Notes: generated by a model not told the origin, from the letters alone. A stretch of DNA of 63,102 nucleotides, filler included, from Octopus bimaculoides (GCF_001194135.2; 7 parts of 5 records of this genome joined end to end with filler, not necessarily neighbours in it); one strand, 5' to 3'. Positions 4,175 through 35,049 are shown, numbered from the whole stretch's first letter. Numbers and translations: made by a program.

Positions 4175-5042
4175 CAGAGTGCGGTGGGTAAATTGTCGCC
4201 ATTTTATATTCTTCATTTCGTGCATGTGCATTGTTTGTTTTTGATTTTGTCGACTACACAGTACAGTAAGGTCAATTGGACATTGTCTGTGAGAGAAACA
4301 GCACCATGACGCAATTCACTCTGCCAGAAATTTGGAAATGACATGCTGTACTGCTTGGCATTCGCACTGGAAGCTCCAATACGAACATTTCAGAGTGCTT
4401 GGGTGTCAATCTGAGAACAGTACAATCTGAGGACAAATATCCAGTCAACATCATGGTGTTTAGAGTGATCACTAGTGATGGCGACGTTGTGCCTCCATTC
4501 ATCTTCCCATACGGCCTCAGTCTCAACACGGAGGCCTATATCAAGTGCTTGGAGGAGGTAGTGCTGCCCTGGGTCAAGAGGATGGCTGCTGGAAGACCCT
4601 ATGTCTGGCAACAGGACTCTGTACCATGCCACACAAGTAGGAGAACCCAGTCATGGCTGTCAGACAATTTCTACGACCACATCACCCCTAACATCTGGCC
4701 ACCTAACTCCCCAGATTGCACCCCACCCCCGATTATTATGTGTGAGGCGCAGTTTAGCGAGAGACCAACAAAACACTTTGTAACACCAAAGATGAACTGA
4801 AGGCAAGGATTATGGCAGCATTCACCAACTTAAACAAGGAAACAGTCCAGAAGAGTTGCAGGGGATTCCAATGTCGTCTGGAGTCCGTGGTTGAAGTCAA
4901 TGGCGATTTTATTGAATAAATTTACTCATTGGTATTTCAAAATATTTTTATGTAATTTTGGTAAGTATATCTGTCAAAATGAGATGTCAGTGTTATTTTC
5001 ATTTTTGCGTAATTTAGACGACAGTTTATTCACCGCACCCCG
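4175..5042 (+). mobile_element. Internally deleted Tc1/mariner-superfamily element, DD37D (maT-like) transposase remnant
   Basis: TIRs cagagtgcggtgggtaaattgtcg / cgacagtttattcaccgcaccccg, with TA on the left. ORF 4399-4800 has WQQDSVPCHTS...WPPNSPDC, followed by a frameshifted DYYV about 37 residues after the second D. Confidence 0.85.
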
Positions 5043-5122
5043 AATAAAGCTTAAGATTAAAAACAAAAGAAGCAAGTATAAACAAAACAAATTGTGAAAC
5101 TAAATTCTTTCACTGTTACATC

Positions 5123-5312
5123 TCACATGATAATTTTAAAGAAGACCAATGGCCAAAAGATGATAGGTTCGTATACAGGCCCTGCCTTGTGTCCATGGTT
5201 TAAATTCTTGTTTCTTGCAAGTACATTCCACCCAACTTTGTAAGTCATTTGCATGTATAGTAAAATAGCAACATATGTTTTTCTATCTGATGAAATCCAG
5301 GATCCAACAAAT
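5123..5312 (-). CDS. Possible downstream (terminal?) exon of the unidentified minus-strand gene
   Basis: Open frame FVGSWISSDRKTYVAILLYMQMTYKVGWNVLARNKNLNHGHKAGPVYEPIIFWPLVFFKIIM*. Acceptor ataag|A is phase 2, matching the end of exon 5928-6106, but it is a weak acceptor. Confidence 0.3.
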
Positions 5313-5477
5313 CTTATAATTACTAAACGCAGCAACAACAACGATACCAATAGCAAAAACAGCGAAAACAATACTACAACAATAGTAACAACATCAACAG
5401 TAACAACAACATCGATATTAACAACAATAACAACAGTGGCAGAAGAGATGGCTGGACTAAAAATAGATATCATATTC

Positions 5478-5692
5478 ATTTCAAATGTTGGCACAACGCC
5501 AGAAAGTTCGGGGGCAGAGGATAAGTCGATTACATCGACCCCAGTGTTCAACGGGCACTTATTTTATCGACCCCAAAAGGATGAAAGGCAAAGTCGACCT
5601 CGGCGGAATTTGAACACAGAACTTAAAGACAGATGAAATGTCGCTTAGCATTTTGCCCGGCTTGCTAACCATTCTGCCAGCTCGCCACCTTA
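5478..5692 (-). mobile_element. tRNA-derived SINE, family D
   Basis: Reverse complement of aaggtggcgagctggcagaat...gttcaaattccgccgaggtcgactttgcctttcatcc. More than 10 copies in the window. Confidence 0.9.
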
Positions 5693-5927
5693 AAAATAGA
5701 CATCATACATAGAGAGTATGCATTTTTACTGTAAGTTTAATATATCATTTGATATAACACCACTTCCTGACCCTTGAGTGCCTTTACGAGAGTTCATTTT
5801 ATTATGAGCTTTCGGATCAGATTTCCTGTATGACTATAACTTCCTTTTCATATTTCCACCAATCACAGAGCCCCTCCCCCGTGCCAAAAAAAATCGTCTC
5901 TGTGACTAAGTTATGAAAATAAATTAC

Positions 5928-6106
5928 TTGGCATCTATACATTTCTGAAGCATTGTGATAACCCTAAAAATAGCTTGTGTCAAAGCACTGCAGGATGTAT
6001 TCATAAAACCAGCACCATATTCATAAAACAGTTCGAATGGGCCTAACCTTCTTTGCAAAGCATGTACGAAAACACCCAGTGTGTGATTAATTCGATTTAC
6101 GACTGT
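5928..6106 (-). CDS. Candidate internal coding exon (179 nt) of an unidentified gene
   Basis: Acceptor aaatttctttcag|, donor |gtaatt, open frame TVVNRINHTLGVFVHALQRRLGPFELFYEYGAGFMNTSCSALTQAIFRVITMLQKCIDA. Phase 0 start fits exon 8264-8380. Confidence 0.55.
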
Positions 6107-6497
6107 CTGAAAGAAATTTCATATATGTGACATTTTATTGACGTCTAATCAAGGTGTGAGTGTAGCCATTGCTTCTGAAGATATTAGAATTCTTCTGGTT
6201 TTACGTATCAACAGAGAAGAATTGGCGGAATGTTTTCGACTATGTTTAATGATATTTTCCCTCTTCACTTCCCGGTCATATTTTTCCCTTTGGCATGAAC
6301 GTTCACACACACAGAGGTACACACATGCACGTGTATATATATATATATATATAATCAAAGTGTACTGTATTATACATTCATTGGGGCCGATCTTTCCTAT
6401 CGGTTTCGCACTAGGGGTCCAACGGAGTGTTGGGTAACGGTCCGATTGTGTAACCCTGTACTCATCAGAGGTAGCCGTTATGGAATTAAATATGACG

Positions 6498-6559
<62 letters not shown>

Positions 6560-7014
6560 NNNNNNNNNNNNNNNNNNNNNNNNNNNNNNNNNNNNNNNNN
6601 NNNNNNNNNNNNNNNNNNNNNNNNNNNNNNNNNNNNNNNNNNNNNNNNNNNNNNNNNNNNNNNNNNNNNNNNNNNNNNNNNNNNNNNNNNNNNNNNNNNN
6701 NNNNNNNNNNNNNNNNNNNNNNNNNNNNNNNNNNNNNNNNNNNNNNNNNNNNNNNNNNNNNNNNNNNNNNNNNNNNNNNNNNNNNNNNNNNNNNNNNNNN
6801 NNNNNNNNNNNNNNNNNNNNNNNNNNNNNNNNNNNNNNNNNNNNNNNNNNNNNNNNNNNNNNNNNNNNNNNNNNNNNNNNNNNNNNNNNNNNNNNNNNNN
6901 NNNNNNNNNNNNNNNNNNNNNNNNNNNNNNNNNNNNNNNNNNNNNNNNNNNNNNNNNNNNNNNNNNNNNNNNNNNNNNNNNNTATATATATATATATATA
7001 TGCATGTATGTATA

Positions 7015-7162
7015 CGACGGGCTTCTTTCAGTTTCCGTCTACCAAATCTACTCATAAGGCTTTGGTCAACTTGAGGATGCAGTAGAAAACACTTACCCAA
7101 GGTGCCACGCAGTGTAAATGAACCCTACACCATGCAGTTGGGAAGAAACCTTCTTACCACAC
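7015..7162 (-). mobile_element. tRNA-derived SINE, family C (5' half)
   Basis: Matches 43835-44222 and 9646-9798 (gggcttctttcagtttccgtctaccaaat...cttaccacac). Confidence 0.9.
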
Positions 7163-7466
7163 ACCTATAGACAGACAGGCAGATAGACATACAGGCAGAT
7201 ACAGGCAGGCAGATAGACAGACAGACGGACGGACAGACAGGCAAGCAGACAGACAGACAGACTGACAGACAGGCAGACAGACAAACAGATAGATAGATGG
7301 ATGGATGGATGGATGGATGGATAGGTGGATGGATGGATAGACAAGCAGACAGACAGGTATAGACAGATAGATATTATATATACGTGTATATATATGCATA
7401 TGTATATACATGTATGTGTATATACATGTATATACCTCAACATATATGTATGTGTGAGTGTGTGTA

Positions 7467-7501
<35 letters not shown>

Positions 7502-8049
7502 GCTTATGTATAGGCAAACTATATATACAGATTTACATATAATTGTCACTGACACGTATCAAGGTCACGTGGCAAGTGAAGACTTGTTTTGAGCCAAAAT
7601 TTAATGTTAAAGAATTTTGTGTTAAAGAATTTTGGGTGCAGTCAGATATTTTCACGCATGACTGTATTCGTGTACGCGTGGGTGTACGAGTGTATGTGTT
7701 TGAGTGTGTGAATGCGTGAACATTGACCAATGATATATAATTACGCACGTACACACTCGTGCGCGCACACAGATGTATTTCTACACATACATACATACAC
7801 TAACATTTACGCAAATGCACATATAGTAGACACATACATGCGCATATACAGAGGAACAAAATGTTCTCCGTTGTGTACAGAATTAATAAATGAATGCAGG
7901 TACATCATCGATTTTCCGCTATATTTAGTTTCAAAGCCTTGACGGAATAACCGTTTTGCCAGACCATCCGTTATTTTGTCTCTTTGCTTCTTAATCTAAT
8001 AAACAGTCGATGAACCAATATCATATAGATATTACGCAGCTTATGTATC

Positions 8050-8566
8050 AAAACACTGCTGGCGGCGGCGGGGATCTATCTCCCCACTAGTAATATAAAC
8101 AAAAGTGCATTTTGCACAACAAGCCAATATGAAAGTTTCTTTGGTGGTATCTACTGCAGTATAGCTTGTTCTAACGGAACATCCACATTTAATTGGAGAT
8201 AAATGTTACCTCTCGGTATTAATACTGCTTCTGTCGTTGATATACATTTTTTAACAAACTCACCAGTGTCTGTTCTGGCACTGTTTTTTCTACATATCGC
8301 TGACAGGAAAAGGGATTGAAGCTACCTCTAGCGGTTAAGAGTCCATCATTGACAAGACCAAGCAAGGTCAAAATCACATGCTGGAGGTAGAGGAGATTTA
8401 TCTCCATGCTAGCAATATAAACAAGAATGTATTTTGAATCAAAAGCCAATATGAGTTTCTCTCGTGATATCTACCGCAGTATAGCTTCTTCTAACAGAAC
8501 ATCTACGTTTAAGTGGGGATAAATATTACTTCTCGGTATTAATATTACCTCTGTCGCTGATATATA
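8050..8566 (+). repeat. Diverged direct duplication of ~195 bp (8050-8245 vs 8372-8566, offset ~322)
   Basis: Co-linear matches such as ctagtaatataaacaa/ctagcaatataaacaa, gcagtatagctt, ctcggtattaata. Confidence 0.85.
8264..8380 (-). CDS. Candidate internal coding exon (117 nt, phase 0-0) of an unidentified gene
   Basis: Acceptor ctcctctacctccag|, donor |gtgagt. Only frame 0 is open: HVILTLLGLVNDGLLTARGSFNPFSCQRYVEKTVPEQTL. Confidence 0.55.
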
Positions 8567-9163
8567 AAGTCATTTCTTTCAAGTTCTACTCTATCGTGGA
8601 ATGATATGGATTGGTGTTTGTATTTGACGCATCACTAACGGTCTCTGTTCTCTTACCTGTGGTAGCCATAGCTAGGGAAAACTTTTAACTAAATAAGCAG
8701 GGGATCTCTCGAGATTTTGGTATCGCCACTAACGAATACAGTATAAATGATGGATTTACATACACAGTACACATAAAGTCACCTGCGGTTGCGCAGTGGA
8801 CTATACTGATGGCTACGGGAATTTCAATTACACCCTAGTAATTTATCTGGATTGAAGGTGTTACCAGACTCTTAATTGCCGGAAAATTGATGGTGGTCTA
8901 TATTTAAGAAAGAAAAAAGAGATAGGTTTGACGAAAACAATGAAAATGAAATCTCTGAAATCTCGATTTCTCGAATTTTCGTAAAGGAGGAAATGTAATA
9001 ATGGAGAAAATAGAAAGAAAAAAAGGGTTAAATACTGAAGTCAAGCGCTTTCTTTCCAGCTTAGGGGAATTTTCGTGACGTAGATTTTCCTTTTTCATGT
9101 CGTCATATTATTGTTTCTTAAAGTAGAGCTATTTAGTTTTGGTGAATTCTTTTTGTTTTATAT

Positions 9164-9424
9164 AGTGGCTGTGTGATAAGTAGCTTGCTTACCAACCACA
9201 TGGTTCTGGGTTCAGTCCCTACTATAGCCTCGGGCCGACCAAAGCCTTGTGAGTGGATTTGGTAGACGCAAACTGAAAGAAGCCCATCGTATATATGTAT
9301 ACATATATATGTATGTGTGTGTATGTGTTTGTGTGTCTGTGTTTGTCCCCCCAACATCGCTTGACAACCGATGTTGGTGTGTTTACGTCCCCGTAACCTA
9401 GCGGTTCGGCAAAAGAGACCGATA
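9164..9424 (+). mobile_element. SINE family C (internally deleted, runs into a gap)
   Basis: gtggctgtgtgataagtagcttgcttaccaaccacatggttctgggttcagtcc...ggttcggcaaaagagaccgata. Confidence 0.9.
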
Positions 9425-20892: not shown

Positions 20893-22334
20893 TACTGAAT
20901 ATCTAATTTGTGATTCTCTCATCGCAACTTAAAGTTTTGTGAAATCTTACACTTAGCTGAAAAGGTTTGATAAAACCAAATCCTGTCTACGGTTGTTCCC
21001 CAGTTCTTGCTGAAAAGAAAAGAATTGAGCTAATTTTGTCTTCCTCTCGCTACATATGTATTTCAAATTAGATTTTTGCTGTTAATTGTGTTAACACACT
21101 TTTAGCTACTTTTTAAAAAAATTCAGATTACACCCCTGAGTGTGCTGAAGATACTTTTTGATCGACAGATCACCATTTGGATTTCCTCCCTCTAGAATCT
21201 CTCGAATAAGAATCAGTAATATATTAGTGTTAATTAACTTCACTGTGTCTGCCACAACAAATACATTTTGCGTAGACTGAAAGGAAGAGCAATTTGCAAC
21301 ATTTTTAAATGTACGAAATGAAGCACAAATAAAATAAATTACAAAAACAAAAGTCCTTAATTCAAAATGAAACACAAACACATCGTTTTCGAAACAGCTT
21401 CGCGCCTATGTATTTCCATTAACATTAACCGCTGAATTTTATTTCTTATTGCACTAATCTCGTTTATCCTACCACAAAGGGTGGACAAAATCTTTTCTGT
21501 TATAACGCAACAAATGGTCTTTATCAGGGGGCTTGATAGAACTAGGTATAATTATAGTTTAGAAAGCCTATCGATAATTTCCATGAAGTAAACGAGAAAA
21601 ATATTTAAAAAAAACCAAGGTGATGAATACTAGAAAGTAAAGTACATAATTTTATTCCATTCATTTTAAATTTATCATTCTATCCAGAACTTTAGAATAT
21701 TCTATCTACGACAGAAGTAAATTATTCTGCCTCTATTCTTACCACCTGACGCTTCTGCCTCTATTCTTATCTATTGACACTTCAATGAATATTTTTACCA
21801 CCTTTTTTACATTTGTATTTTTATACTCTGCGTATTTTGTACTCTGTCTTATTTACTGTTTTCTTTATTCTTATTCAATTTGCCTCTGCATAGGAACTCA
21901 ACATCTTACACTGTGAAGTGAAATACATATTTTGCTGATTACTTCAGCAACTCATATATATATTGAAGATAGTGTTATTTGAATTGAGATCATCCACTTG
22001 TAACGTCATGTAAACGTACTGTGATAAGAAAATCTTATGAAAGACTTTTGATTGAATGGATACTATTACAGACAACCAGGCAAGATGGAAGTGGTTCGTC
22101 TCACAAGCAGTGTGTCAGTGACCGAGACAGTTTAATCTAAAAGGTCTGTATGTAAGTGCCCTAATGTGAACTGATTCGCCGTTGCACATTACAGCGTCAA
22201 TTTGATTGCTCAACCTGCTTGAAACACATATATATACATATAATTAAGATATGCATTCGACCAAGCGCCCTCGAACAGCTAATATCCAAAAAAAACCAGC
22301 ACTTCCGAATTCACATAGACAAGTAAGAACTCGC

Positions 22335-25270
22335 ATTCTTCCCTGTTTTCAGCTAGAAAATCGTTACAGGCTTGACCTTCCGAAAGTCTCAGAGTGGACC
22401 TGGATGAGTGGCGACGAAAGTTTCAATTCTTACGTAGATAGGATAGTGATAAGAACTAGAGATAAGTCTAGTTTTAGCTGTCCACAGCTTGTCCAGGTAG
22501 CTTATACTGACCATAGAATAGTTAAGTGTAGACTGGACATAGATAGTACAGTTAAGAGAGGATCCTGCTACTGGAAGCTGAACAAGTCTATTTTGACTTG
22601 CGAGGTATACCGTAGCCTGATTAAGGAATTAGTAGTACAGAGGGCGTGAACAGGTGCCGTGGTTAATAACCGATGGTGGTTCGCCCTCAAAAGATCCATT
22701 CGTTTTGAGTCTATTAGGTTTAGCTATCAGCTAAGACTAGATAAGGCCAAAATAGAAGGGCAACTAGTTAAGGATCTAGAAGAGGTATTGAGGTTGGGCT
22801 CTGCATCCCACATCTTGGCAGCGAGAACGGCCTTGGACCGTCACCTCAAAGCCAAACACGAGAGGTGCAGCGTTCGGGCTAAAGTGCGCGCATTAAGCCG
22901 CGAGGAATTTAATGTTGTCGGATGGGCCCGTACGGTAGAAACCCAGCGTGGCAATGATGCCACAATTAGGTCTCTGGTTGATGGCAATGGGGGATCGGTC
23001 GAGGAACAGGACGAGATGTGTGAGGCACTTTACAAGCACTTCGCCGAGTTGTTCGGGAGGAGCAGGATGCTGGATCATGGTGAGGCCCTTAAGGATTTCC
23101 TGTCTGGCGGCCCGCGTCTGTCGGCGCGAGAGACTGAGTGCTGTGAAGGGCCAATCACAGCCGAGGAGGTGATAGAGGTGCTAGGCGGGTGCTCCGGGGA
23201 GAAGTCACCGGGTCTCTATGGTCTACCCTATGAATTTTATAAAAGTGTGCCAGACTTGTTCGGGCACCTGCTGACCAGCGTCTATGCCAACTGGCAGCAG
23301 AATGGGAGAATTCCCAAGTCTGCGAGCCGGGGGTGGTAACGTTGTTCAGAAAGGATCCGAGCCAGAGGGACGAAATAGGAAACTTCAGGCCCATAACTCT
23401 GCTGAACACAGAGTTAAAGATTTTGGCCAAGGTGCTAGCGAAAAGGTTGGCACGAGTCATGGACAGACTTGTGGAGGAAGCGCAAACATGTGCTATCCCG
23501 GGCAGGACGATCCACGACAATTTCCACCTTATATGCTACTCCTTAGAAAGGGTGGGGAAGCTTTCTGGCGCAGGAGGGGCATTGGTACATTTAGACCAGT
23601 CTAAGGCATTTGATAGGGTCGACCATCGGTACTTGGTGACGGTCCTAGAGAAGGCTGGCCTGGGCCAAACCTTCTGCGGTTGGATTGCTGCGTTGTACAG
23701 CGACATCGAGTCTGTCGTGAAAGTGAATTGTTTCGTTTCGAAACCATTCAAGATCGAACGCTCAGTGCGTCAGGGGTGTCCCCTGTCCCCGTCTTTGTAT
23801 GTGTTGGCTCTCGAGCCATTGCTCGAGGACCAGCTTCCAGTGGTGGAAGAGGCTATCAAAATCTACGAGGCGGTGGCAAGAGCAAAGGTTAACAAGGACA
23901 AGTCGGTCGGTTTGCAACTCGGCACCTGGAAGGGCAAGCCGATGCCGTCCAATAACGTCATGGGGCGTTGGACGGAAGGTCCTGTTAAGCTGCTTGGAGT
24001 CTTGTTTGGACTAGGCCTCCAAATAGAGAAGAATTGGAGCGAGGTTATCAGCAAGGTGACTGCTCTAACCCAGACCTGGTCTGGGCGGGCGTTATCCTTG
24101 CTAGGAAAGGCGGAGGTGGTGCAGATGTTTATAGCATCGGTTATTACCTATTGTCTGACCGTGGTGCCTTGCTCCGATTTGTGGATGAACAAGTTGGAGA
24201 GAATCCTTTTCCGCGTTTTGTGGAAGGGAGGAAAGCCACTTGTGAAGCGCTCTGTCTGCTGCCAGAAACCTCAAAAGTGTGGGCTAAAGATGCCTTGGCT
24301 GAGGATGTGAAAACTCGCGTTAAGGTTGAGGCACCTCTGGTTTTACCTTGATGGAGAGGTGTGGTCACCGCACGTCCGGTTCTATCTTTCACAGTTAACG
24401 TCGTTAACAGACATTGGTACATGGATCAAGCAGAGACTTAGGCTGGAGGACTGGTATTTGGAGTGCCGTCAGACGCTCCAGCTACTCTCTCGGGCAATGC
24501 CGGTAGCAGGAGTTCCACCGCGGATTTCTATAGCGGGTTAGTGGAATCTATGTCAGAAGACGCCTTGGATGAGACCCTGGTCTACAATGAAAATCAGTCG
24601 GTCAACCTGTTCAGGAGAACGTTCGGGCCAGGGTATCTGGATAATTACCAGAAATCCCTGGCTTGGCAGGGATTTCAAGACAAGTTATCAAGGCACAGAA
24701 GTGCCGTCTCGCTGATATACCCGAGATGTGGACGGGATAGGGAAACCGTCTTGCACGCATTCGTGGAGTGTCAGGAGTTATCGGGACTGATAGCTTTTGT
24801 CGAACAGCTGTTGTCAGTGATGGGAAGAATACAGCTATCAGCTGAGTCGATCATCGAGATCGTGCCGCCTCCTTCTCTTAACAGGGAAAGGAAGGCTTGC
24901 TTTTTCTGCGTAGTAGCTATACTAAAAGAAACAGTATGGAAGACGTTTGTGAAAGGTATAGTGACAGGTACCTTTGTATCCGGGCAGGGACTGGTTAACT
25001 GTTTTAGTCACCACCTCAACAGTAAGATCAGGCTGGAGAAGAGGTACCTGTCACGAGATAGATTCGTGAAAAGACGGATGCCTGTGACAAGAAAGCTGAG
25101 AGAGATGGGAACCAGGTAGGTGGAAGTCCGGAGAGAAAGAGGAAAAAGAGAGCAAGGGTTCTACCCTGGTGGTCGGATGCCTCTCCTTCAGAGAAGACAC
25201 CGGAAAATTGTAATTGATAAAGTGTTAAAATTTTTAATTGTAAATATTATATAACAAATTTTTAATCGAT
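22335..25270 (+). mobile_element. 5'-truncated L1/Tx1-clade LINE ORF2 pseudogene (APE end, RT, C-terminal zinc knuckle, 3' UTR)
   Basis: TDHRIV and YWKLNKSIL (APE end); KSPGLYGLPYEFY; NFRPITLLNTELKILAKVL; LDQSKAFDRVDH; VRQGCPLSPSLY; YPRCGRDRETVLHAFVEC. Has frameshifts and stops, and the YADD segment is deleted. Confidence 0.93.
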
Positions 25271-26288
25271 GGTAGGAGTTACTACACCATTTTATGTTTG
25301 TCTGTCTTATTTGTTCCCTCTGATGAACGAAGTCTAGATTCATTCTCGTAATCGCGAAATCGGTCGATACACAATTAAGTCTATTTTAAAAGAAAGTTGG
25401 TCATCTTCTGTTGGTTGTTTTTTCCTCGCATAGGTACTAAATGTGATTATTTTGAGAAGTCCACTGTGTGGCGTTATTATTTCTATAATAATGCCCTTTA
25501 TATAAATATAAACGAATAATTATATTCTTGGGAATAGAAATTTCCCTAATGAATTTTTTTACATACTGGCTTCTTGATAAAATTCTTGTAAAAGAGTTTT
25601 ATCCTTTTTTGAATTTATTTATCAAATATATACACGGAATACATTCAATTTTAACTTTTTTATTCCTGTCTTCACATGGGTNNNNNNNNNNNNNNNNNNN
25701 NNNNNNNNNNNNNNNNNNNNNNNNNNNNNNNNNNNNNNNNNNNNNNNNNNNNNNNNNNNNNNNNNNNNNNNNNNNNNNNNNNNNNNNNNNNNNNNNNNNN
25801 NNNNNNNNNNNNNNNNNNNNNNNNNNNNNNNNNNNNNNNNNNNNNNNNNNNNNNNNNNNNNNNNNNNNNNNNNNNNNNNNNNNNNNNNNNNNNNNNNNNN
25901 NNNNNNNNNNNNNNNNNNNNNNNNNNNNNNNNNNNNNNNNNNNNNNNNNNNNNNNNNNNNNNNNNNNNNNNNNNNNNNNNNNNNNNNNNNNNNNNNNNNN
26001 NNNNNNNNNNNNNNNNNNNNNNNNNNNNNNNNNNNNNNNNNNNNNNNNNNNNNNNNNNNNNNNNNNNNNNNNNNNNNNNNNNNNNNNNNNNNNNNNNNNN
26101 NNNNNNNNNNNNNNNNNNNNNNNNNNNNNNNNNNNNNNNNNNNNNNNNNNNNNNNNNNNNNNNNNNNNNNNNNNNNNNNNNNNNNNNNNNNNNNNNNNNN
26201 NNNNNNNNNNNNNNNNNNNNNNNNNNNNNNNNNNNNNNATATACATATATACATATATATACACACATATACACACACATACACACAT

Positions 26289-26331
<43 letters not shown>

Positions 26332-27134
26332 TACAAATTCACAAATACACTCATACATGAATATATATAAAAAGTTGCATAAATATATCTGTGCACAAAA
26401 ATATACATGCATCCAATCAAGCATATATACTTTATAAATAATAACAATAAAAATAAAAATAAAAATAAAAATAAAAATAAAAATCCAAATACATATCTAT
26501 ACACAAAAATCTATACAAACACATCTAGTTTCATACAAAAACATGAATATATACACACACACACCCACAGATAAACATGTATATATTAACACTTATACAC
26601 GTACAATCATACACACATATATATTTTTATGTATTTGTTGTTACATTTATTTATAAAGAGACTCATACGCAATTTAATACACTCCCTAGTACGTATGAAT
26701 TTACTGTCGATGTGTGGTAATTATTAATAAAATAGAGGGATATTTATCTGAAGGTAATTCATATATTAGTGAATGAGATGTTAAATGAATGAAAATTAAT
26801 TAATGAATTAAAGAATAATAAAGTTAATGGATTGTCTATTAATCTACATGAAATGATTACTTTATTATTATATGTAAGAAAAGTTGGGCTGAATTAGGAG
26901 TTGAAAGAGTAAATCTTGCTTAAGAAGACAAAGTTAATATTATAAATAAGGTTTACTATAGTAATTCCGTAACATAATTGTTATTGTAAAAGTTTTATCG
27001 AGATTTGAAAATCACAATATATTATGCTGATCAGNNNNNNNNNNNNNNNNNNNNNNNNNNNNNNNNNNNNNNNNNNNNNNNNNNNNNNNNNNNNNNNNNN
27101 NNNNNNNNNNNNNNNNNNNNNNNNNNNNNNNNNN

Positions 27135-27665
27135 TATATATATATATGTATCTATATATATAAATATATATATGTATTTATATATATATATAGATATACA
27201 TACATATATTTATATATATAAATATATATATACATAAATATATATATATACATGTATTTGTATATATATACATATAAAGATATAAATATATAAATACATA
27301 TATATATGTATTTATATATACATAAATATATATATACATGTATTTGTATATATATACATATAAAGATATAAATATATAAATACATATATATATGTATTTA
27401 TATATATATAAATATTTATATATATTATGTATTTATATATATATATAGATTTATATATATATAATGTATTAATATATATATATATACATGTCAATATATA
27501 TATATATGTATTTATATATATGTCAATATATATATGTATTTATATATAGAAATATATGTATATGTACATGTATTTATATATATATAAATATATAAATATA
27601 TATATAATTTTTGTTTAATCATGCATATTTATATACGTGACTGTATATATATATATTTACGTTTT

Positions 27666-27735
<70 letters not shown>
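27135..27735. repeat. AT-rich (TA)n-derived tract containing an ~88-bp higher-order duplication
   Basis: catgtatttgtatatatatacatataaagatataaatatataaatac occurs twice (near 27250 and 27338). Confidence 0.85.
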
Positions 27736-27737
<2 letters not shown>

Positions 27738-27888
27738 CACACATACACGCACAAATATATATATATACACGCAACATAAAACCACAACATCCTGATATCC
27801 TTTAGAAATAAAGTCAATTAAATGGAGAATGCAACATATATATTACTATTAGCATGGACAGTAGTAGTAGTAGTAGATGTAGTAGTAA

Positions 27889-30243: not shown

Positions 30244-30605
30244 AAGGTGCGGGCGTGGTTTTGTGGTAATGCGCGGGCGTGGCTGTATGGTAAGAAGTTG
30301 CTTCCCAACCACATAATTCCAGGTTCAGTCCCACTGCGTGGTGCCTTGAGCAAGTGTCTTCTGCTATAGCCTCGGGCCGACCAAAGCCTTGTGAGTGGAT
30401 TTGGTAGACGGAAACTGAAAGAAGCCCATCGTGTGTGTATGTGTGTGTGTGCATGCATGTATATATCCATGTGTATGTGTGTCTTTGTGTCTGTTTGTCA
30501 CTCCATCACCGATTGACAACCGGTGTTGGTGAGTTTACGTCCCCGTAACATAGCGGTTCGGCAAAAGAAACTGATAGAATAAGTACTAGGCTTAAAAAGT
30601 AATTC
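30244..30605 (+). mobile_element. SINE family C with a duplicated 5' end
   Basis: gcgggcgtggttttgtggtaa is immediately followed by gcgcgggcgtggctgtatggtaag and the full body. Confidence 0.9.
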
Positions 30606-31036
30606 CTGCGAGCTATTTGTCTATCGGTTATAATATACCCCCCCCCCTTTCTCAGAGCAGCCAGTGTTACAGGAAATGAGAAACAAACCAACAAAAAGAG
30701 AAGCTTGATATAGGATTTAAATTCTTGTGTTCCTCTTATATAAAACGCTCAATCAATTCCATAGAGCACACTAGTAAACGTATTTGATGAGCAATTAAGT
30801 CTAACTATCGCATGAGGCCAGTAACACTTGAGGGTTGGGAAAGTCGATTACATCGATCTCAATGCTCAACTGGTATTTATCTTATCGACCCAAAAGGGTC
30901 TGAGGCATTAACGATTTTGTTATCTCGCCGTATTTTCTATTTGGTAATAAAATGATAATTGTATACATAAATAGGTATATACGCAGGTGTGTGTCTATAT
31001 ATCTACATGTATATGTGCGTATATGTATGTACGTAC

Positions 31037-31069
<33 letters not shown>

Positions 31070-31284
31070 AGCAATAATAAATCTCTGAACGAAGTATAAA
31101 CAGTAGCTGCACGACATCGTGAAGTATATTTGCCACTTAAATGTGACTAACCCTTAAGGGTGGATGCTACTGTAGTTTGTAGCCCCAGGAAGACACCTCC
31201 TCCAGCTGCCTATTGACACACTTTCTGTGCCCTATTCGTATTTGCAAAGGAAGCCATCTTTCCCATCTTCAACCTGACGTGATA

Positions 31285-31329
31285 CACAAGGACCCGAGTT
31301 TCTGTTTATTGACCCCTCATCAGCGTGTG
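31285..31329 (-). ncRNA. Minimal type I hammerhead ribozyme motif (degenerate copy)
   Basis: cacacg CTGATGA ggggtcaataaaca GAAA ctcggg TC cttgtg. Core is intact; stems I and II have mismatches. Confidence 0.6.
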
Positions 31330-31622
31330 GCAATTGCCGATTTCTCTTTATTATAGGCACAAGGCCTGAACACAGACATTCGGGAACAAAAATAAAACAC
31401 ATGGAAGAATGAATATACAGTGAATTAAATTACAATGAATATGAGATGGGTTTTCTCGGTCCCGCTCCCAAACGAAACCATTTCTTTTTTACAATTAAAC
31501 ATTCTTACAGTTTTTTCTTTTTTCTTTTTTGGATCGTTCTTTTTCTTTTTCTTCTAAACTTTTTAACAGTCTATTTTTCTCTTTTTTCTTTTTTATCAAA
31601 CATAAATTTTACTCACTTACTT

Positions 31623-32111
31623 TTAAATGTTCATAAAGGGTTTCAAATCTTCTAATTCCACGACCGGTGGGAGCTCGTGAATCTTGACTTCAACCCCCAG
31701 CTGGTCCATGTAACTTCCAAACATCTCTCTCAATTTCTCAAATCTCTCTCTATCTATGACTATTCCTTTAGTGTTTTCCGGGTATTTTCCCGGCGGCAGC
31801 TTTACTCTTATTACCGATTTATATTTTACAATCGTTTTCCCTATTTCTGTACTTTTGATATACGTGACCAAATGTCACTTATATCTCTTCCTTTTCACTT
31901 CTGCTTGCTTCGGGTCCCGTCCTGATCTGTTCAGGCGTGCAGAAACATCACAACCAATATTATAAACGCTTCCTCTTTCTACCTGTTGTAATGCTGTTTT
32001 TTTCTGTGTGCCTTCTTTCACTACTGCTTCTGTTGGTGTTTCGCACCTATTTCTCTTTTCTTCCGTCACAATCCCTTTTAGCCATTTTTTACTGTCTGAG
32101 GGAGAGTTCAA
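31623..32111 (-). pseudogene. Interrupted basic ORF, possibly retroelement ORF1/gag-like
   Basis: Two in-frame ORFs separated by one stop. VKIHELPPVVELEDLKPFM loosely resembles an L1/Tx1 ORF1 RRM start. The assignment is tentative. Confidence 0.4.
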
Positions 32112-32428
32112 CCGTTCCTTTCTTTTCCTCGTGTTTATTACTGTGTTTCATAAAAAAGAAAAAAAGAGAAAAATAGACTGTTAAAAAGTTTAAAGGAAAA
32201 AGAAAAAGAACGATCCATAAAGAAAAAAGAAAATATTGTAAGAATGTTTAATAGTAAAAAAGAAATCACGGTTTCGTCTGGGAGCGGGACGAGAAAGATG
32301 TCTCATGTTCATTGTAATTTAATTCATTGTATATTCATTTCTTCATGTGTTTTTTGTTCCCGAATGTCTATGTATATCCTCTCTGTGTTCAGGCCTTGTG
32401 CCTATAATAAAGAGAAACCGGCAAATGC

Positions 32429-32473
32429 CACACGCTGATGAGGGGTCAATACACAGAAACTCGGGTCCGTGTG
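32429..32473 (+). ncRNA. Minimal type I hammerhead ribozyme motif
   Basis: Perfect stem I cacacg/cgtgtg, CTGATGA, GAAA, near-palindromic stem III ACTCGGGT and a GTC cleavage triplet. Stem II is eroded (ggg/cac). Confidence 0.7.
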
Positions 32474-32639
32474 TAACACGTCAGGTTGAAGATGGGAAGG
32501 ATGGTTTCCCTTTGCAAATACTGATAGGGCACAGAAAGTGTGTCAATAGCCAGCTGGAAGAGGTGTCTTCCTGGGGCTACAAGCTACAGTAGCATCCATT
32601 CTTATGGGTTAGCCACATCTAAGTGGCAAATATACTTCA

Positions 32640-32689
<50 letters not shown>

Positions 32690-32960: not shown

Positions 32961-35049
32961 AAAAAGAGAAACAAACACGCAATGTAAATGGGGTTTAAAA
33001 TTTACGTCAGGTATTCCGGTAGAATTTTGTTGAGGTATTTATAGACTACATCATAGCATATAATCTACCATCTTTAGATGAAATTTTAAACAGGTACGAA
33101 TCTAACCAGCTTATTCAAAAATGTTGGGTTGTGTCATCATGATCGATGTATTATATCGCTTGTTTGATATCCTTCCTGTTTAAAATTCTTCCCGAAGGTA
33201 GTGGATTATATGTTATGATGTGATTTAATGAAAACATCAATAAAATCGTAACGAAACAGTCGTAAATTTTATACTCTATTTGTGTCCTGTTTATATATAT
33301 GATGTATGAGTGTTTGAAGGAGAGGATTTAATTTTTTTTATAATGGGAGAGAGAAAACAGCTGTTAAAAATAAAAGAAGAAAAGAAACTGCATCCACTTG
33401 CGATGAATGAGTGAATGCAATTTATAGTCTCTCGCTCCATCCCTCACTCTGCCTCTTTCTCACCCTCTCTCCCTCTGTGTGCATCTCTCTCACAAACACA
33501 CACACACGCATAAAATAATTAAGTTGGATGGACGCAATTTAAAAGCAAAAGGGAAATAATTCACCGTTATTAAAACGTAACGAAGGGTGCAGCGAGCACC
33601 AACATTGCTAAAAATACGAGTCAAAGACTCTAGCCNNNNNNNNNNNNNNNNNNNNNNNNNNNNNNNNNNNNNNNNNNNNNNNNNNNNNNNNNNNNNNNNN
33701 NNNNNNNNNNNNNNNNNNNNNNNNNNNNNNNNNNNNNNNNNNNNNNNNNNNNNNNNNNNNNNNNNNNNNNNNNNNNNNNNNNNNNNNNNNNNNNNNNNNN
33801 NNNNNNNNNNNNNNNNNNNNNNNNNNNNNNNNNNNNNNNNNNNNNNNNNNNNNNNNNNNNNNNNNNNNNNNNNNNNNNNNNNNNNNNNNNNNNNNNNNNN
33901 NNNNNNNNNNNNNNNNNNNNNNNNNNNNNNNNNNNNNNNNNNNNNNNNNNNNNNNNNNNNNNNNNNNNNNNNNNNNNNNNNNNNNNNNNNNNNNNNNNNN
34001 ATATATATATATATATAATATATGAAAAATTTCGTTATAGGTATAAATATGCCATAAGCAAGTATAATAAATGGAGGAAAAAAGATGTTGAATCAAAAAT
34101 TAGTTTTAATACATACTGGATTCAATACATACGCGCGTTTTGAATGCAATACAAATATGTAGATAAAACATTGTAATCATAGTAATTATAATTAAATTTA
34201 AGCATTGTCATTCTCATCAGTGTGAGGAATTTTTGGAAAAATATCAAAAAAGGTTTAATAAATTAAAATAAAATAAAGTACAGTAAGGGAGAATACAGAG
34301 AAATATCGGATATTAACAAACAAGTTGTAAAAGGGTAAAATAATTGTAATAATAATAGTGAGAGAGACGAAAAAGAAAAAGAATTACATATCAATGTGTA
34401 TGCAAGTCTATATTGCAGTACACTATAACAAAAAAATAAAAATCTGACAGATATGCTTAAAGAAATAATAACATATCGAGACGAAGTGTAATGTAAACCA
34501 GGCCACGTGTGTATACTAGAAAATAATGCAACAGGTACACTAGCAGAAAAACGCTATAGAGAGTTGTACGTATACATATTAATATTGAAAAAATATATAC
34601 ATTTCAAGAGGCAAGGCTGTTTGAAAAAGATACAATATTTAAGTAAAAATGTACATACAAAGCAGAGAAAAAAAACAAAAAGAACTTAACAAAGAAAAAG
34701 TAACGATTACAGGCAGGACAGGTCGGTGTATACAAGAGAGTTACCTTACTCAAAATTTAGCCCGGGGTAAGGGAGATAATAAAAAAGAATAGGAAAAAAC
34801 GAATATATGAAGGAGAAAAATATAAATTAACAAGTGATAGAAAAACCGTATGTACTTAACACATAAGTATATAGTCATATATATACATACATACACACAT
34901 ACGCATACACACACACACGTGCATACACTAACACATACTCATACACACACATACACATACAAGGGTGCAAGTGTGAGGGAAGATACAAACAAGTAAAATA
35001 AAATAATAAAGGAGCACGATTCACATAAGACGTATATATGTATATATAC

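What the first reader, a model, noticed from the sequence alone, without database searches (positions are those of the whole stretch)
31116..32643. Ribozyme-armed fold-back element: ~490-bp inverted arms with hammerheads enclosing an ORF1/gag-like frame
Seen: two long reverse-complement arms. Each has an outward-reading type I HHR motif in its outer half and a pyrimidine-rich, UTR-like stretch in its inner half that runs into a basic A-rich ORF (32111 to 31623). A minus-strand transcript would carry an antisense HHR at its 5' end, the ORF, then a sense HHR at its 3' end, and could fold back over ~490 bp. Known: minimal HHRs mark PLE pseudo-LTRs and PLEs often have inverted pLTRs, but their ORFs are RT/GIY-YIG, which this ORF does not resemble. 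Inference: a non-autonomous PLE derivative that captured another element's ORF1, a DIRS-like ITR element, or an unclassified HHR retroelement family.
Basis: partly seen in the sequence, partly recalled or inferred. Interest (0 to 1): 0.8.

Follow-up and report, generated by a model that had tools for sequence, protein, structure and literature searches.

The report
Dead head-to-head octopus retroelement insertion
The "fold-back element" is a decayed octopus retrotransposon insertion: two 5'-truncated copies joined head to head inside a (TA)n microsatellite. The family itself is an unusual mosaic of a LINE ORF1-derived gene and a terminal module with a hammerhead-like motif.

Summary
The inverted arms are real: 31116-31602 against 32144-32643, 88% identity. 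The centre is a single minus-strand frame with one TGA nonsense codon.

The only close relative is an Octopus sinensis locus. It has the same ORF-to-arm junction but only one arm, 3' of the ORF, between (TA)n runs. The arm is therefore the 3' end of a retroelement, not a terminal inverted repeat.

The window holds two 5'-truncated copies joined 5' to 5' with a few bases of microhomology. Both 3' ends face outward into (TA)n. The arms have decayed equally, which fits a single event.

The ORF belongs to an Octopus-only family. Its N-terminal half with a CCHC knuckle is homologous to a LINE ORF1 (E 2e-37). Its C-terminal domain of about 85 aa is new.

Each arm is a mosaic. The inner part is the family's 3'UTR and ends in the octopus LINE/SINE tail. 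The outer 230 nt is an extra module.

That module carries hammerhead-like core boxes, helix I and a short helix III, which chance rarely gives (about 8e-4 per arm). Helix II is defective, G10.1-C11.1 is missing, and Rfam finds nothing.

Insertion into (TA)n, an adjacent inverted truncated copy and a one-sided 45-nt tail match published Penelope-like insertion hallmarks. No RT partner was identified.

The parts
30985..31070 (.). Left target microsatellite, (TG/TA)n grading into (TA)n.
   Evidence: Read directly from the sequence and repeat families D1/I7-I21. The Rfam mir-297-like hits here are microsatellite artefacts below the gathering score.
31071..31115 (-). 45-nt unique stretch between the left copy's 3' terminus and the (TA)n run. 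It is a candidate PLE-type one-sided 'tail'.
   Evidence: It has no other match in the piece or in loci L001-L006. Its size and one-sidedness resemble the 30-40 bp tail described in PMC8557442. Its status is inconclusive.
31116..31343 (-). Left copy: terminal ~230-nt module carrying the HHR-like motif at 31329-31285. The module's 3' terminus ..CTTCACGAT lies at 31116.
   Evidence: Three-way alignment with the right arm and L001, regex scan, and no counterpart in L003/L004/L005.
31344..31622 (-). Left copy: family 3'UTR. A purine-rich run follows the stop codon, and the UTR ends in a tail like that of octopus LINEs and SINEs.
   Evidence: Local alignments to the 3'UTRs of L004, L005 and the L003 units give z = 8-13.6, with 0 of 300 shuffles as good. 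Against the SINE tail z is about 5-6.
31623..32147 (-). Left copy: 5'-truncated ORF remnant covering the linker and the C-terminal domain, equivalent to residues 82-254 of P0001. The stop codon is at 31623-31625 and a TGA nonsense codon at 31875-31877.
   Evidence: Translation; 75% aa identity to the O. sinensis protein P0001; dN/dS 1.16 against L001.
32144..32147 (.). Head-to-head junction where the 5' ends of the two truncated copies meet, with 2-5 nt of microhomology (AAACA/TGTTT).
   Evidence: Read from the sequences, using the BLAST end-points.
32144..32414 (+). Right (inverted) copy: 3'UTR only. It starts about 20 nt after the position of the ORF stop and ends in the LINE/SINE-like tail ..CCTTGTGCCTATAATAAAGAG.
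32415..32643 (+). Right copy: terminal ~230-nt module carrying the HHR-like motif at 32429-32473, nominal cleavage after 32467. The 3' terminus ..CTTCACGAT is followed directly by (AT)n.
   Evidence: The same terminus followed by (AT)n occurs at L001 6940.
32644..32686 (.). Right target microsatellite, (AT)n.

Best explanation
The 1.53-kb palindrome is a dead insertion of a composite, non-autonomous octopus retroelement.

The family unit reads: 5'UTR, then an ORF1-like gene, then a purine-rich run, then a LINE-type 3'UTR and tail, then a ~230-nt terminal module with a hammerhead-like motif. The gene has a LINE-ORF1-derived N-terminal half with a CCHC knuckle, a charged linker and a novel C-terminal domain of about 85 aa.

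Shown:
- The element integrates through its constant 3' terminus (..CTTCACRAT) into (TA)n microsatellites, with variable 5' truncation.
- In the window, two copies lie 5' to 5' with their 3' termini facing outward. One is truncated inside the ORF and one has only the 3' 500 nt.
- Both copies have since decayed neutrally.

Inferred:
- Both copies were made in one integration event. The two ends of a break in the self-complementary (TA)n target each primed reverse transcription of the element's 3' end, and the two incomplete cDNAs were joined by microhomology.
- The RT/endonuclease was supplied in trans, most likely by a Penelope-like element. The terminal module would be a PLE- or retrozyme-type 3' end whose hammerhead is ancestral and is now degenerate in these copies.

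The inverted arms are a by-product of integration, not a functional fold-back device.
For: - Arms 88% identical. Substitution-only K = 0.08, with 8 against 9 lineage-specific changes in the outer module, so the arms are of equal age.
- L001 (O. sinensis) carries the same ORF-to-arm junction with a single 3' arm, a 5' truncation at about residue 40-73 of the full ORF, and (TA)n on both sides.
- The right arm and L001 both end ..CTTCACRAT directly at (AT)n.
- The protein family is confined to Octopus, and full-length members are 356-453 aa.
- The N-terminal half is homologous to the ORF1 of a complete LINE in L003: E 2e-37, 30% identity over 233 aa.
- The inner arm is homologous to the 3'UTRs of distant family members and ends in the LINE/SINE tail. 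The outer 230 nt is absent from those members.
- HHR-like core plus helix I is expected 0.0008 times per arm by chance.
- PLE hallmarks from the literature are heavy 5' truncation, an inverted 5'-truncated copy adjacent to the 5' end, a one-sided 30-40 bp tail, a (TA)n target bias, and HHRs near the 3' end (not in Naiads). PLEs of the Naiad clade are present in Octopus, and non-autonomous PLE derivatives are known (PMC8557442; PMC4209133).
- dN/dS is 1.16 and there is a nonsense codon, so the copy is dead.
Against: - Only two loci (three arms) of this subfamily could be retrieved, so family-wide frequencies are unknown.
- No PLE RT or GIY-YIG gene was found, and no autonomous element with a matching 3' end could be searched for.
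- Some LINEs also target microsatellites (own knowledge), so insertion into (TA)n does not prove a PLE partner.
- Naiads, the PLE clade documented in Octopus, lack canonical HHRs.
- The HHR-like motif lacks G10.1-C11.1. Its helix II is intact only in L001, no compensatory changes are seen, and no Rfam model matches.
- The 45-nt 'tail' is seen once only.
Confidence: 0.55

Rival explanations
1. Same head-to-head retro-insertion, but mobilised by a LINE-type reverse transcriptase, either microsatellite-specific or recognising the 3' end. The terminal 230 nt would be a 3'-transduced or acquired LINE-type end, and the hammerhead-like motif a chance or non-functional resemblance.
For: - The gene and the inner 3'UTR derive from a LINE.
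- Distant family members L004, L005 and the L003 units end at the LINE/SINE tail and so look LINE-mobilised.
- The HHR-like motif fails Rfam and lacks G10.1-C11.1.
- Microsatellite-specific LINEs are known (own knowledge).
Against: - The terminal module shows no similarity to the 3' ends of the LINE in the window or in L003.
- The motif is unlikely by chance, at 8e-4 per arm.
- The combination of an inverted adjacent truncated copy and a one-sided tail is described for PLEs and stated not to be seen in LINE TPRT (PMC8557442).
Confidence: 0.25
2. Two independent insertions of the same family landed in opposite orientations in one (TA)n hotspot, the second exactly at the 5' end of the first.
For: (TA)n is a preferred target: both loci found lie in (TA)n. 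The arms differ by 8-12%, which could reflect different source copies.
Against: - No (TA)n or other target DNA remains between the two 5' ends.
- The junction shows only microhomology.
- The arms are closer to each other than to L001 and carry equal numbers of private changes.
Confidence: 0.07
3. A single insertion was followed by a DNA-level inverted duplication (palindrome formation by fold-back repair or replication).
For: The junction shows microhomology, and the arms are of equal age.
Against: The right arm stops exactly at the element's own 3' terminus and is followed by (AT)n, as in L001. A DNA-level copy of the left side would be expected to carry the 45-nt stretch or other flank.
Confidence: 0.05
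4. A genuine fold-back/TIR DNA transposon, a DIRS-like element, or an assembly artefact.
For: Long inverted arms.
Against: - L001 has one arm only.
- There is no target-site duplication, transposase, tyrosine recombinase or RT in the element.
- The arms are 12% diverged with indels, which excludes an assembly fold-back.
Confidence: 0.03

Closest known systems
Penelope-like element insertions and their non-autonomous derivatives (for example Chlamys MRC1; animal non-LTR retrozymes)
   Same: - Heavy 5' truncation and a constant 3' end.
- Insertion into (TA)n.
- An inverted 5'-truncated copy abutting the 5' end.
- A one-sided short tail.
- A type I hammerhead-like motif about 180 nt from the 3' end.
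- Relatives occur in head-to-tail arrays.
   Different: - No RT/GIY-YIG gene, and no demonstrated 3'-end match to an autonomous PLE.
- It carries a LINE-ORF1-derived protein gene and a LINE-type 3'UTR.
- The hammerhead lacks G10.1-C11.1 and is not recognised by Rfam.
- Retrozymes are 170-400 nt and non-coding (PMC7229834).
ORF1-only LINE derivatives (HAL1, 'half-L1', in mammals; own knowledge)
   Same: A non-autonomous element that keeps an ORF1-type gene and a LINE-type 3'UTR/tail and has no ORF2. This is seen in the O. vulgaris 1.78-kb units.
   Different: The octopus protein has an extra conserved C-terminal domain. The window subfamily adds a foreign 230-nt terminal module and targets (TA)n. 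The units form tandem arrays.
L1 twin-priming inversions (Ostertag and Kazazian 2001; own knowledge)
   Same: Two cDNAs primed from the two ends of one target break and joined by microhomology, giving an inverted segment.
   Different: Twin priming inverts the upstream part of one RNA without duplicating the 3' end. Here both cDNAs start at the element's 3' terminus, which a self-complementary (TA)n target would permit. The result is a true inverted duplication.
Canonical metazoan type I hammerhead ribozymes (Schistosoma, newt satellite 2, retrozymes)
   Same: - CUGAUGA, GAAA and GUC boxes.
- A 6-bp helix I.
- A 4-bp helix II with a 4-nt loop in the L001 copy.
- A 2-bp helix III capped by a 4-nt loop that is palindromic if G.U wobbles are allowed.
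   Different: - Position 10.1-11.1 is G.A (window) or C.A (L001), not G-C.
- Helix II is broken in both window arms.
- No covariation is seen.
- No Rfam hit at E<=10.

Membership tests
Type I hammerhead ribozyme | Conserved core boxes CUGANGA, GAAA and a cleavage triplet NUH, in type I order (helix I open) | tested here: met
   Present in both arms and in L001, and invariant across the three copies.
Type I hammerhead ribozyme | Helix I of about 4-6 bp flanking the core | tested here: met
   Of the 7 flanking positions scored, 6 pair in the right arm, 5 in the left arm and 5 in L001. Together with the core this is expected 8e-4 times per arm.
Type I hammerhead ribozyme | Helix II closed by the highly conserved G10.1-C11.1 pair | tested here: not met
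   10.1-11.1 is G.A in the window and C.A in L001. The inner GGGU/ACCC helix is intact only in L001 and has 1-2 mismatches in the window arms. The criterion comes from PMC4209133.
Type I hammerhead ribozyme | Short helix III with palindromic 15.2-16.2 and loop 3 (dimer-competent) | tested here: met
   A15.1-U16.1, C15.2-G16.2 and loop UCGG or UUGG. ACUCGGGU is self-complementary if G.U wobbles are allowed (read directly from the sequence).
Type I hammerhead ribozyme | Match to curated covariance models (Rfam Hammerhead families) | tested here: not met
   No hit at E<=1 on the piece, nor at E<=10 on 151-nt slices of the window and L001.
Type I hammerhead ribozyme | Self-cleavage | not testable with these tools
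   Needs an in vitro transcription assay.
Penelope-like element (autonomous) | PLE-type RT with GIY-YIG endonuclease | tested here: not met
   The element holds only the ORF1-like remnant, with no Pfam hit. The RT elsewhere in the piece matches Pfam RVT_1 and is 45-64% identical at the protein level to a LINE in L003 whose ORF2 carries an endonuclease-like N-terminal region by eye.
PLE-mobilised non-autonomous element | PLE insertion architecture: 5' truncation, tandem or inverted truncated partner at the 5' end, microsatellite (TA)n target | tested here: met
   compared with PMC8557442. Only two loci were examined.
PLE-mobilised non-autonomous element | One-sided 30-40 bp tail | tested here: inconclusive
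   A 45-nt unique stretch at 31071-31115 on one side only. There is no second copy to compare.
PLE-mobilised non-autonomous element | 3'-end sequence similarity to an autonomous PLE of the same genome | not testable with these tools
   No octopus genome or repeat library can be searched at the DNA level. Two metagenome pattern scans found nothing.
LINE ORF1 (RRM-like + CCHC type) | Homology to the ORF1 of an autonomous LINE, with a CCHC zinc knuckle | tested here: met
   At family level: P0058 against the L003 LINE ORF1 gives E 2e-37, and zf-CCHC reaches Pfam's threshold. The window copy itself lacks this half, because it is truncated at the position of P0001 residue 82.
TIR DNA transposon / fold-back element | Both inverted termini present in family members, with target-site duplication | tested here: not met
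   L001 has a single arm. No target-site duplication can be discerned.

The most novel reading that the evidence does not exclude
The family is a protein-coding 'retrozyme'. It would be a LINE-ORF1-derived gene with a new C-terminal domain that has fused to a PLE- or retrozyme-type hammerhead module. The hammerhead would cut unit-length RNAs out of head-to-tail arrays, and a PLE would copy them into (TA)n. That would make it a LINE-PLE hybrid non-autonomous element, a kind not yet described.
Probability: 0.15. Interest if true: 0.65.

Novelty: new variant of a known kind. Interest (0 to 1): 0.35.

Why it matters
The locus itself is junk: a neutrally decaying, truncated insertion.

It does expose an Octopus-specific repeat family that mixes parts of two retroelement classes. 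The parts are a LINE ORF1-derived gene, a LINE/SINE tail and a hammerhead-like, PLE-style terminal module.

If the PLE link holds, the family would show that PLE machinery can mobilise protein-coding passengers. It would also give a natural case for testing how self-complementary (TA)n targets generate the inverted insertions typical of PLEs.

The conserved C-terminal domain has no known fold relative.

Tried and rejected
- Rfam scans of the piece, of the motif slices and of an O. vulgaris unit found no ribozyme.
- Single-strand folds of the motif are no better than shuffles, z about 0.
- Pfam gives nothing on the window frame.
- The AF2 model of P0112 is confident only in the C-terminal domain, and Foldseek against the PDB found no significant match.
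- I tested whether the terminal module is the family's own 5'UTR read through from a tandem neighbour. It shows no similarity to the O. vulgaris 5'UTR, with a score below the shuffle mean.
- I looked for similarity between the arm terminus and the LINE 3' ends in the window and in L003. There is none.
- Two metagenome pattern scans for the module found nothing.
- Exact-protein look-ups for window ORFs and O. bimaculoides family members found nothing on record.
- A profile search with the C-terminal domain returned only two Logan proteins.
- The TIR transposon, DIRS and assembly-artefact readings were rejected, as set out under the rival explanations.

Full report
**Observation**

The two inverted arms exist. 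The repeat finder and BLAST place them at 31116-31602 and 32144-32643, with 88% identity over 507 columns. Counting substitutions only, the divergence is about 8%. Several indels separate them, including a 15-nt one. That divergence excludes an assembly fold-back.

Between the arms lies a single minus-strand frame, 32147 to 31623. It is interrupted by a TGA at 31875-31877, where the relative has TGG.

Its layout is CACACG / CUGAUGA / GGGGUCAAUACACA / GAAAC / UCGG / GUC / CGUGUG, with the nominal cleavage site after 32467. The left-arm copy runs from 31329 down to 31285 on the minus strand.

**What the ORF is**

The frame has no Pfam match. Its one close relative is Octopus sinensis LOC118764025 (P0001, 254 aa, 75% identity). 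P0001 has a CCHC zinc knuckle at residues 35-51, above Pfam's cut-off. The window copy lacks that region.

An exhaustive HMMER search found 111 relatives at E<=0.001, 22 of them at E<=1e-10. Every relative with a named source is from Octopus bimaculoides, O. sinensis or O. vulgaris.

Full-length members (P0112, P0058, P0040; 356-453 aa) share one layout:
- an N-terminal domain that begins around a 'SYAAATG' motif;
- the CCHC knuckle;
- a charged linker;
- a conserved C-terminal domain of about 85 aa.

The N-terminal half, up to the knuckle, is homologous to the ORF1 of a complete LINE found in locus L003. That LINE has a 338-aa ORF1 and an ORF2 with an endonuclease-like N-terminal region (by eye) and an RT. 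The comparison gives E 2e-37 with 30% identity over 233 aa.

AlphaFold predicts the C-terminal domain confidently (pLDDT 76-89). It has no significant PDB neighbour.

So 'ORF1/gag-like' is right for the family. The window copy retains only the linker and the C-terminal domain.

**What the arms are**

In the O. sinensis locus L001 the element lies between two (TA)n runs, at about 4807-6940. Two SINE insertions interrupt it there. It is 5'-truncated at about residue 40-73 of the full ORF. It has one arm only, downstream of the stop codon, ending ..GGCAAATATACTTCACAAT directly at (AT)n. The window's right arm ends the same way..CTTCACGAT followed by (AT)n.

The arm is therefore the 3' end of a retroelement that integrates through a fixed 3' terminus with variable 5' truncation.

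The arm is itself a mosaic. Its inner part (32144-32414 and 31344-31622) has two pieces:
- a purine-rich run;
- about 150 nt homologous to the 3'UTRs of distant family members L004, L005 and the O. vulgaris units, with z = 8-13.6 and 0 of 300 shuffles as good.

This inner part ends in the tail motif shared by octopus LINEs and SINEs.

The outer ~230 nt carries the hammerhead-like motif. It has no counterpart in those relatives, in the LINE 3' ends, or in the O. vulgaris 5'UTR.

**Architecture in the window**

The left copy, on the minus strand, runs from the truncated ORF through the 3'UTR to the terminal module. The right arm is a second copy in the opposite orientation, truncated about 20 nt after the position of the stop codon.

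Their 5' ends meet at 32144-32147 with 2-5 nt of microhomology and no intervening target DNA. Both 3' termini face outward into (TA)n. On the left side only, a unique 45-nt stretch (31071-31115) separates the terminus from the microsatellite.

The arms are closer to each other (K = 0.08) than either is to L001 (0.13-0.19). In the outer module they carry 8 and 9 private substitutions. This fits one origin followed by equal neutral decay.

dN/dS between the window ORF and L001 is 1.16. The copy is dead.

**Mechanism**

Craig et al. 2021 (PMC8557442) list the structural hallmarks of Penelope-like element insertions:
- heavy 5' truncation;
- partial tandems;
- a 30-40 bp tail, often at one end only;
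- a strong bias for (TA)n (Naiad, Hydra, Neptune);
- hammerheads near the 3' end, though not in Naiads.

They also report Naiads in Octopus and non-autonomous PLE derivatives. Cervera and de la Pena 2014 (PMC4209133) describe paired PLE hammerheads 100-700 bp apart on opposite strands.

The window locus matches this pattern. I infer that the RT and nuclease came in trans, most likely from a PLE. I also infer that both ends of a break in the self-complementary (TA)n primed cDNA synthesis on the element's 3' end, and that the two incomplete cDNAs were then joined. This is inference, not shown.

A LINE partner remains possible. Microsatellite-specific LINEs exist (own knowledge), and the gene and inner UTR are LINE-derived.

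**The hammerhead**

Core boxes, a 6-bp helix I and a short helix III that is palindromic if G.U wobbles are allowed are present and invariant in all three copies. Such a combination appears in 0.08% of shuffled arms.

Against that:
- helix II is intact only in L001 (GGGU/ACCC);
- position 10.1-11.1 is G.A or C.A, not the highly conserved G-C;
- there are no compensatory changes;
- the whole 3' 220 nt is well conserved, so the motif is not specially preserved;
- no Rfam model matches even at E<=10;
- local folds are no better than shuffles.

I rate it a probable relic of a PLE- or retrozyme-type hammerhead, unlikely to be active in these copies.

A full-length minus-strand transcript folds into a 453-bp hairpin (-845 kcal/mol) that pairs 43 of the motif's 45 nt with its antisense copy. 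The 'ribozyme-armed fold-back' picture therefore does not work mechanistically.

**Comparison and novelty**

As a locus this is an ordinary dead insertion. As a family it combines parts of two retroelement classes: a LINE ORF1-derived gene with a new C-terminal domain, a LINE/SINE tail, and a PLE-style terminal module with PLE-style insertion behaviour.

The closest known things are non-autonomous PLE derivatives and retrozymes, which are non-coding, and ORF1-only LINE derivatives such as HAL1. It is not a member of the autonomous PLEs, because it has no RT/GIY-YIG gene. Its membership among PLE-mobilised elements rests on architecture at two loci only.

**Limits**

No octopus genome or repeat library could be searched at the DNA level. 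Copy number, the family's 5' end, the frequency of inverted partners and the identity of the autonomous partner are all untested.

Noticed in passing
window 22251-25119 (+): Frameshifted LINE ORF2 remnant with an RT (Pfam RVT_1) and an endonuclease-like N-terminal part (by eye, not tested with Pfam). It is 45-64% identical at the protein level to the complete LINE in L003 (11078-15900). No ORF1 is present upstream in the piece.
   Followed up: partly
L002 7308-12650 and L003 1-10874 (O. vulgaris, two chromosomes): Head-to-tail arrays of 1.78-kb ORF1-only units. Each unit reads 5'UTR, ORF, purine run, 3'UTR, LINE tail, and each tail abuts the next 5'UTR. The arrays lie directly upstream of a LINE ORF1+ORF2. 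No Rfam ribozyme was found in the stretch of L003 scanned (5400-9200). The origin of the arrays is unexplained.
   Followed up: partly
L001 5450-5692 and 6105-6527: Two SINE insertions in the O. sinensis copy. The first has the target-site duplication GGTTATGATGTTTC and is annotated as an intron of LOC118764025, so that gene model is a decayed transposon copy.
   Followed up: partly
window 30994-31071, 34856-34924, 26234-27764 and others: Rfam hits to mir-297, mir-466 and mir-1277 are (TG/TA)n microsatellite artefacts, all far below the gathering scores.
   Followed up: yes
window ~30271-30620: A SINE copy, 80% identical to the SINE inserted at L001 6108-6450.
   Followed up: no
proteins P0009 and P0028 (O. 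bimaculoides, O. sinensis): Gene models fuse the CCHC/C-terminal-domain family to an RGS domain (P0009) or to a stretch that looks like an integrase core by eye (P0028, not tested). These are either exonised or chimeric annotations.
   Followed up: no
window 25320-25364 (+): A second CTGATGA..GAAA..GTC regex match in the LINE 3'UTR, with only 3 of 7 helix I pairs. Judged to be chance.
   Followed up: yes
window 25682-26238, 27035-27134, 33636-34000: Assembly gaps (runs of N) inside the piece, flanked by microsatellites.
   Followed up: no
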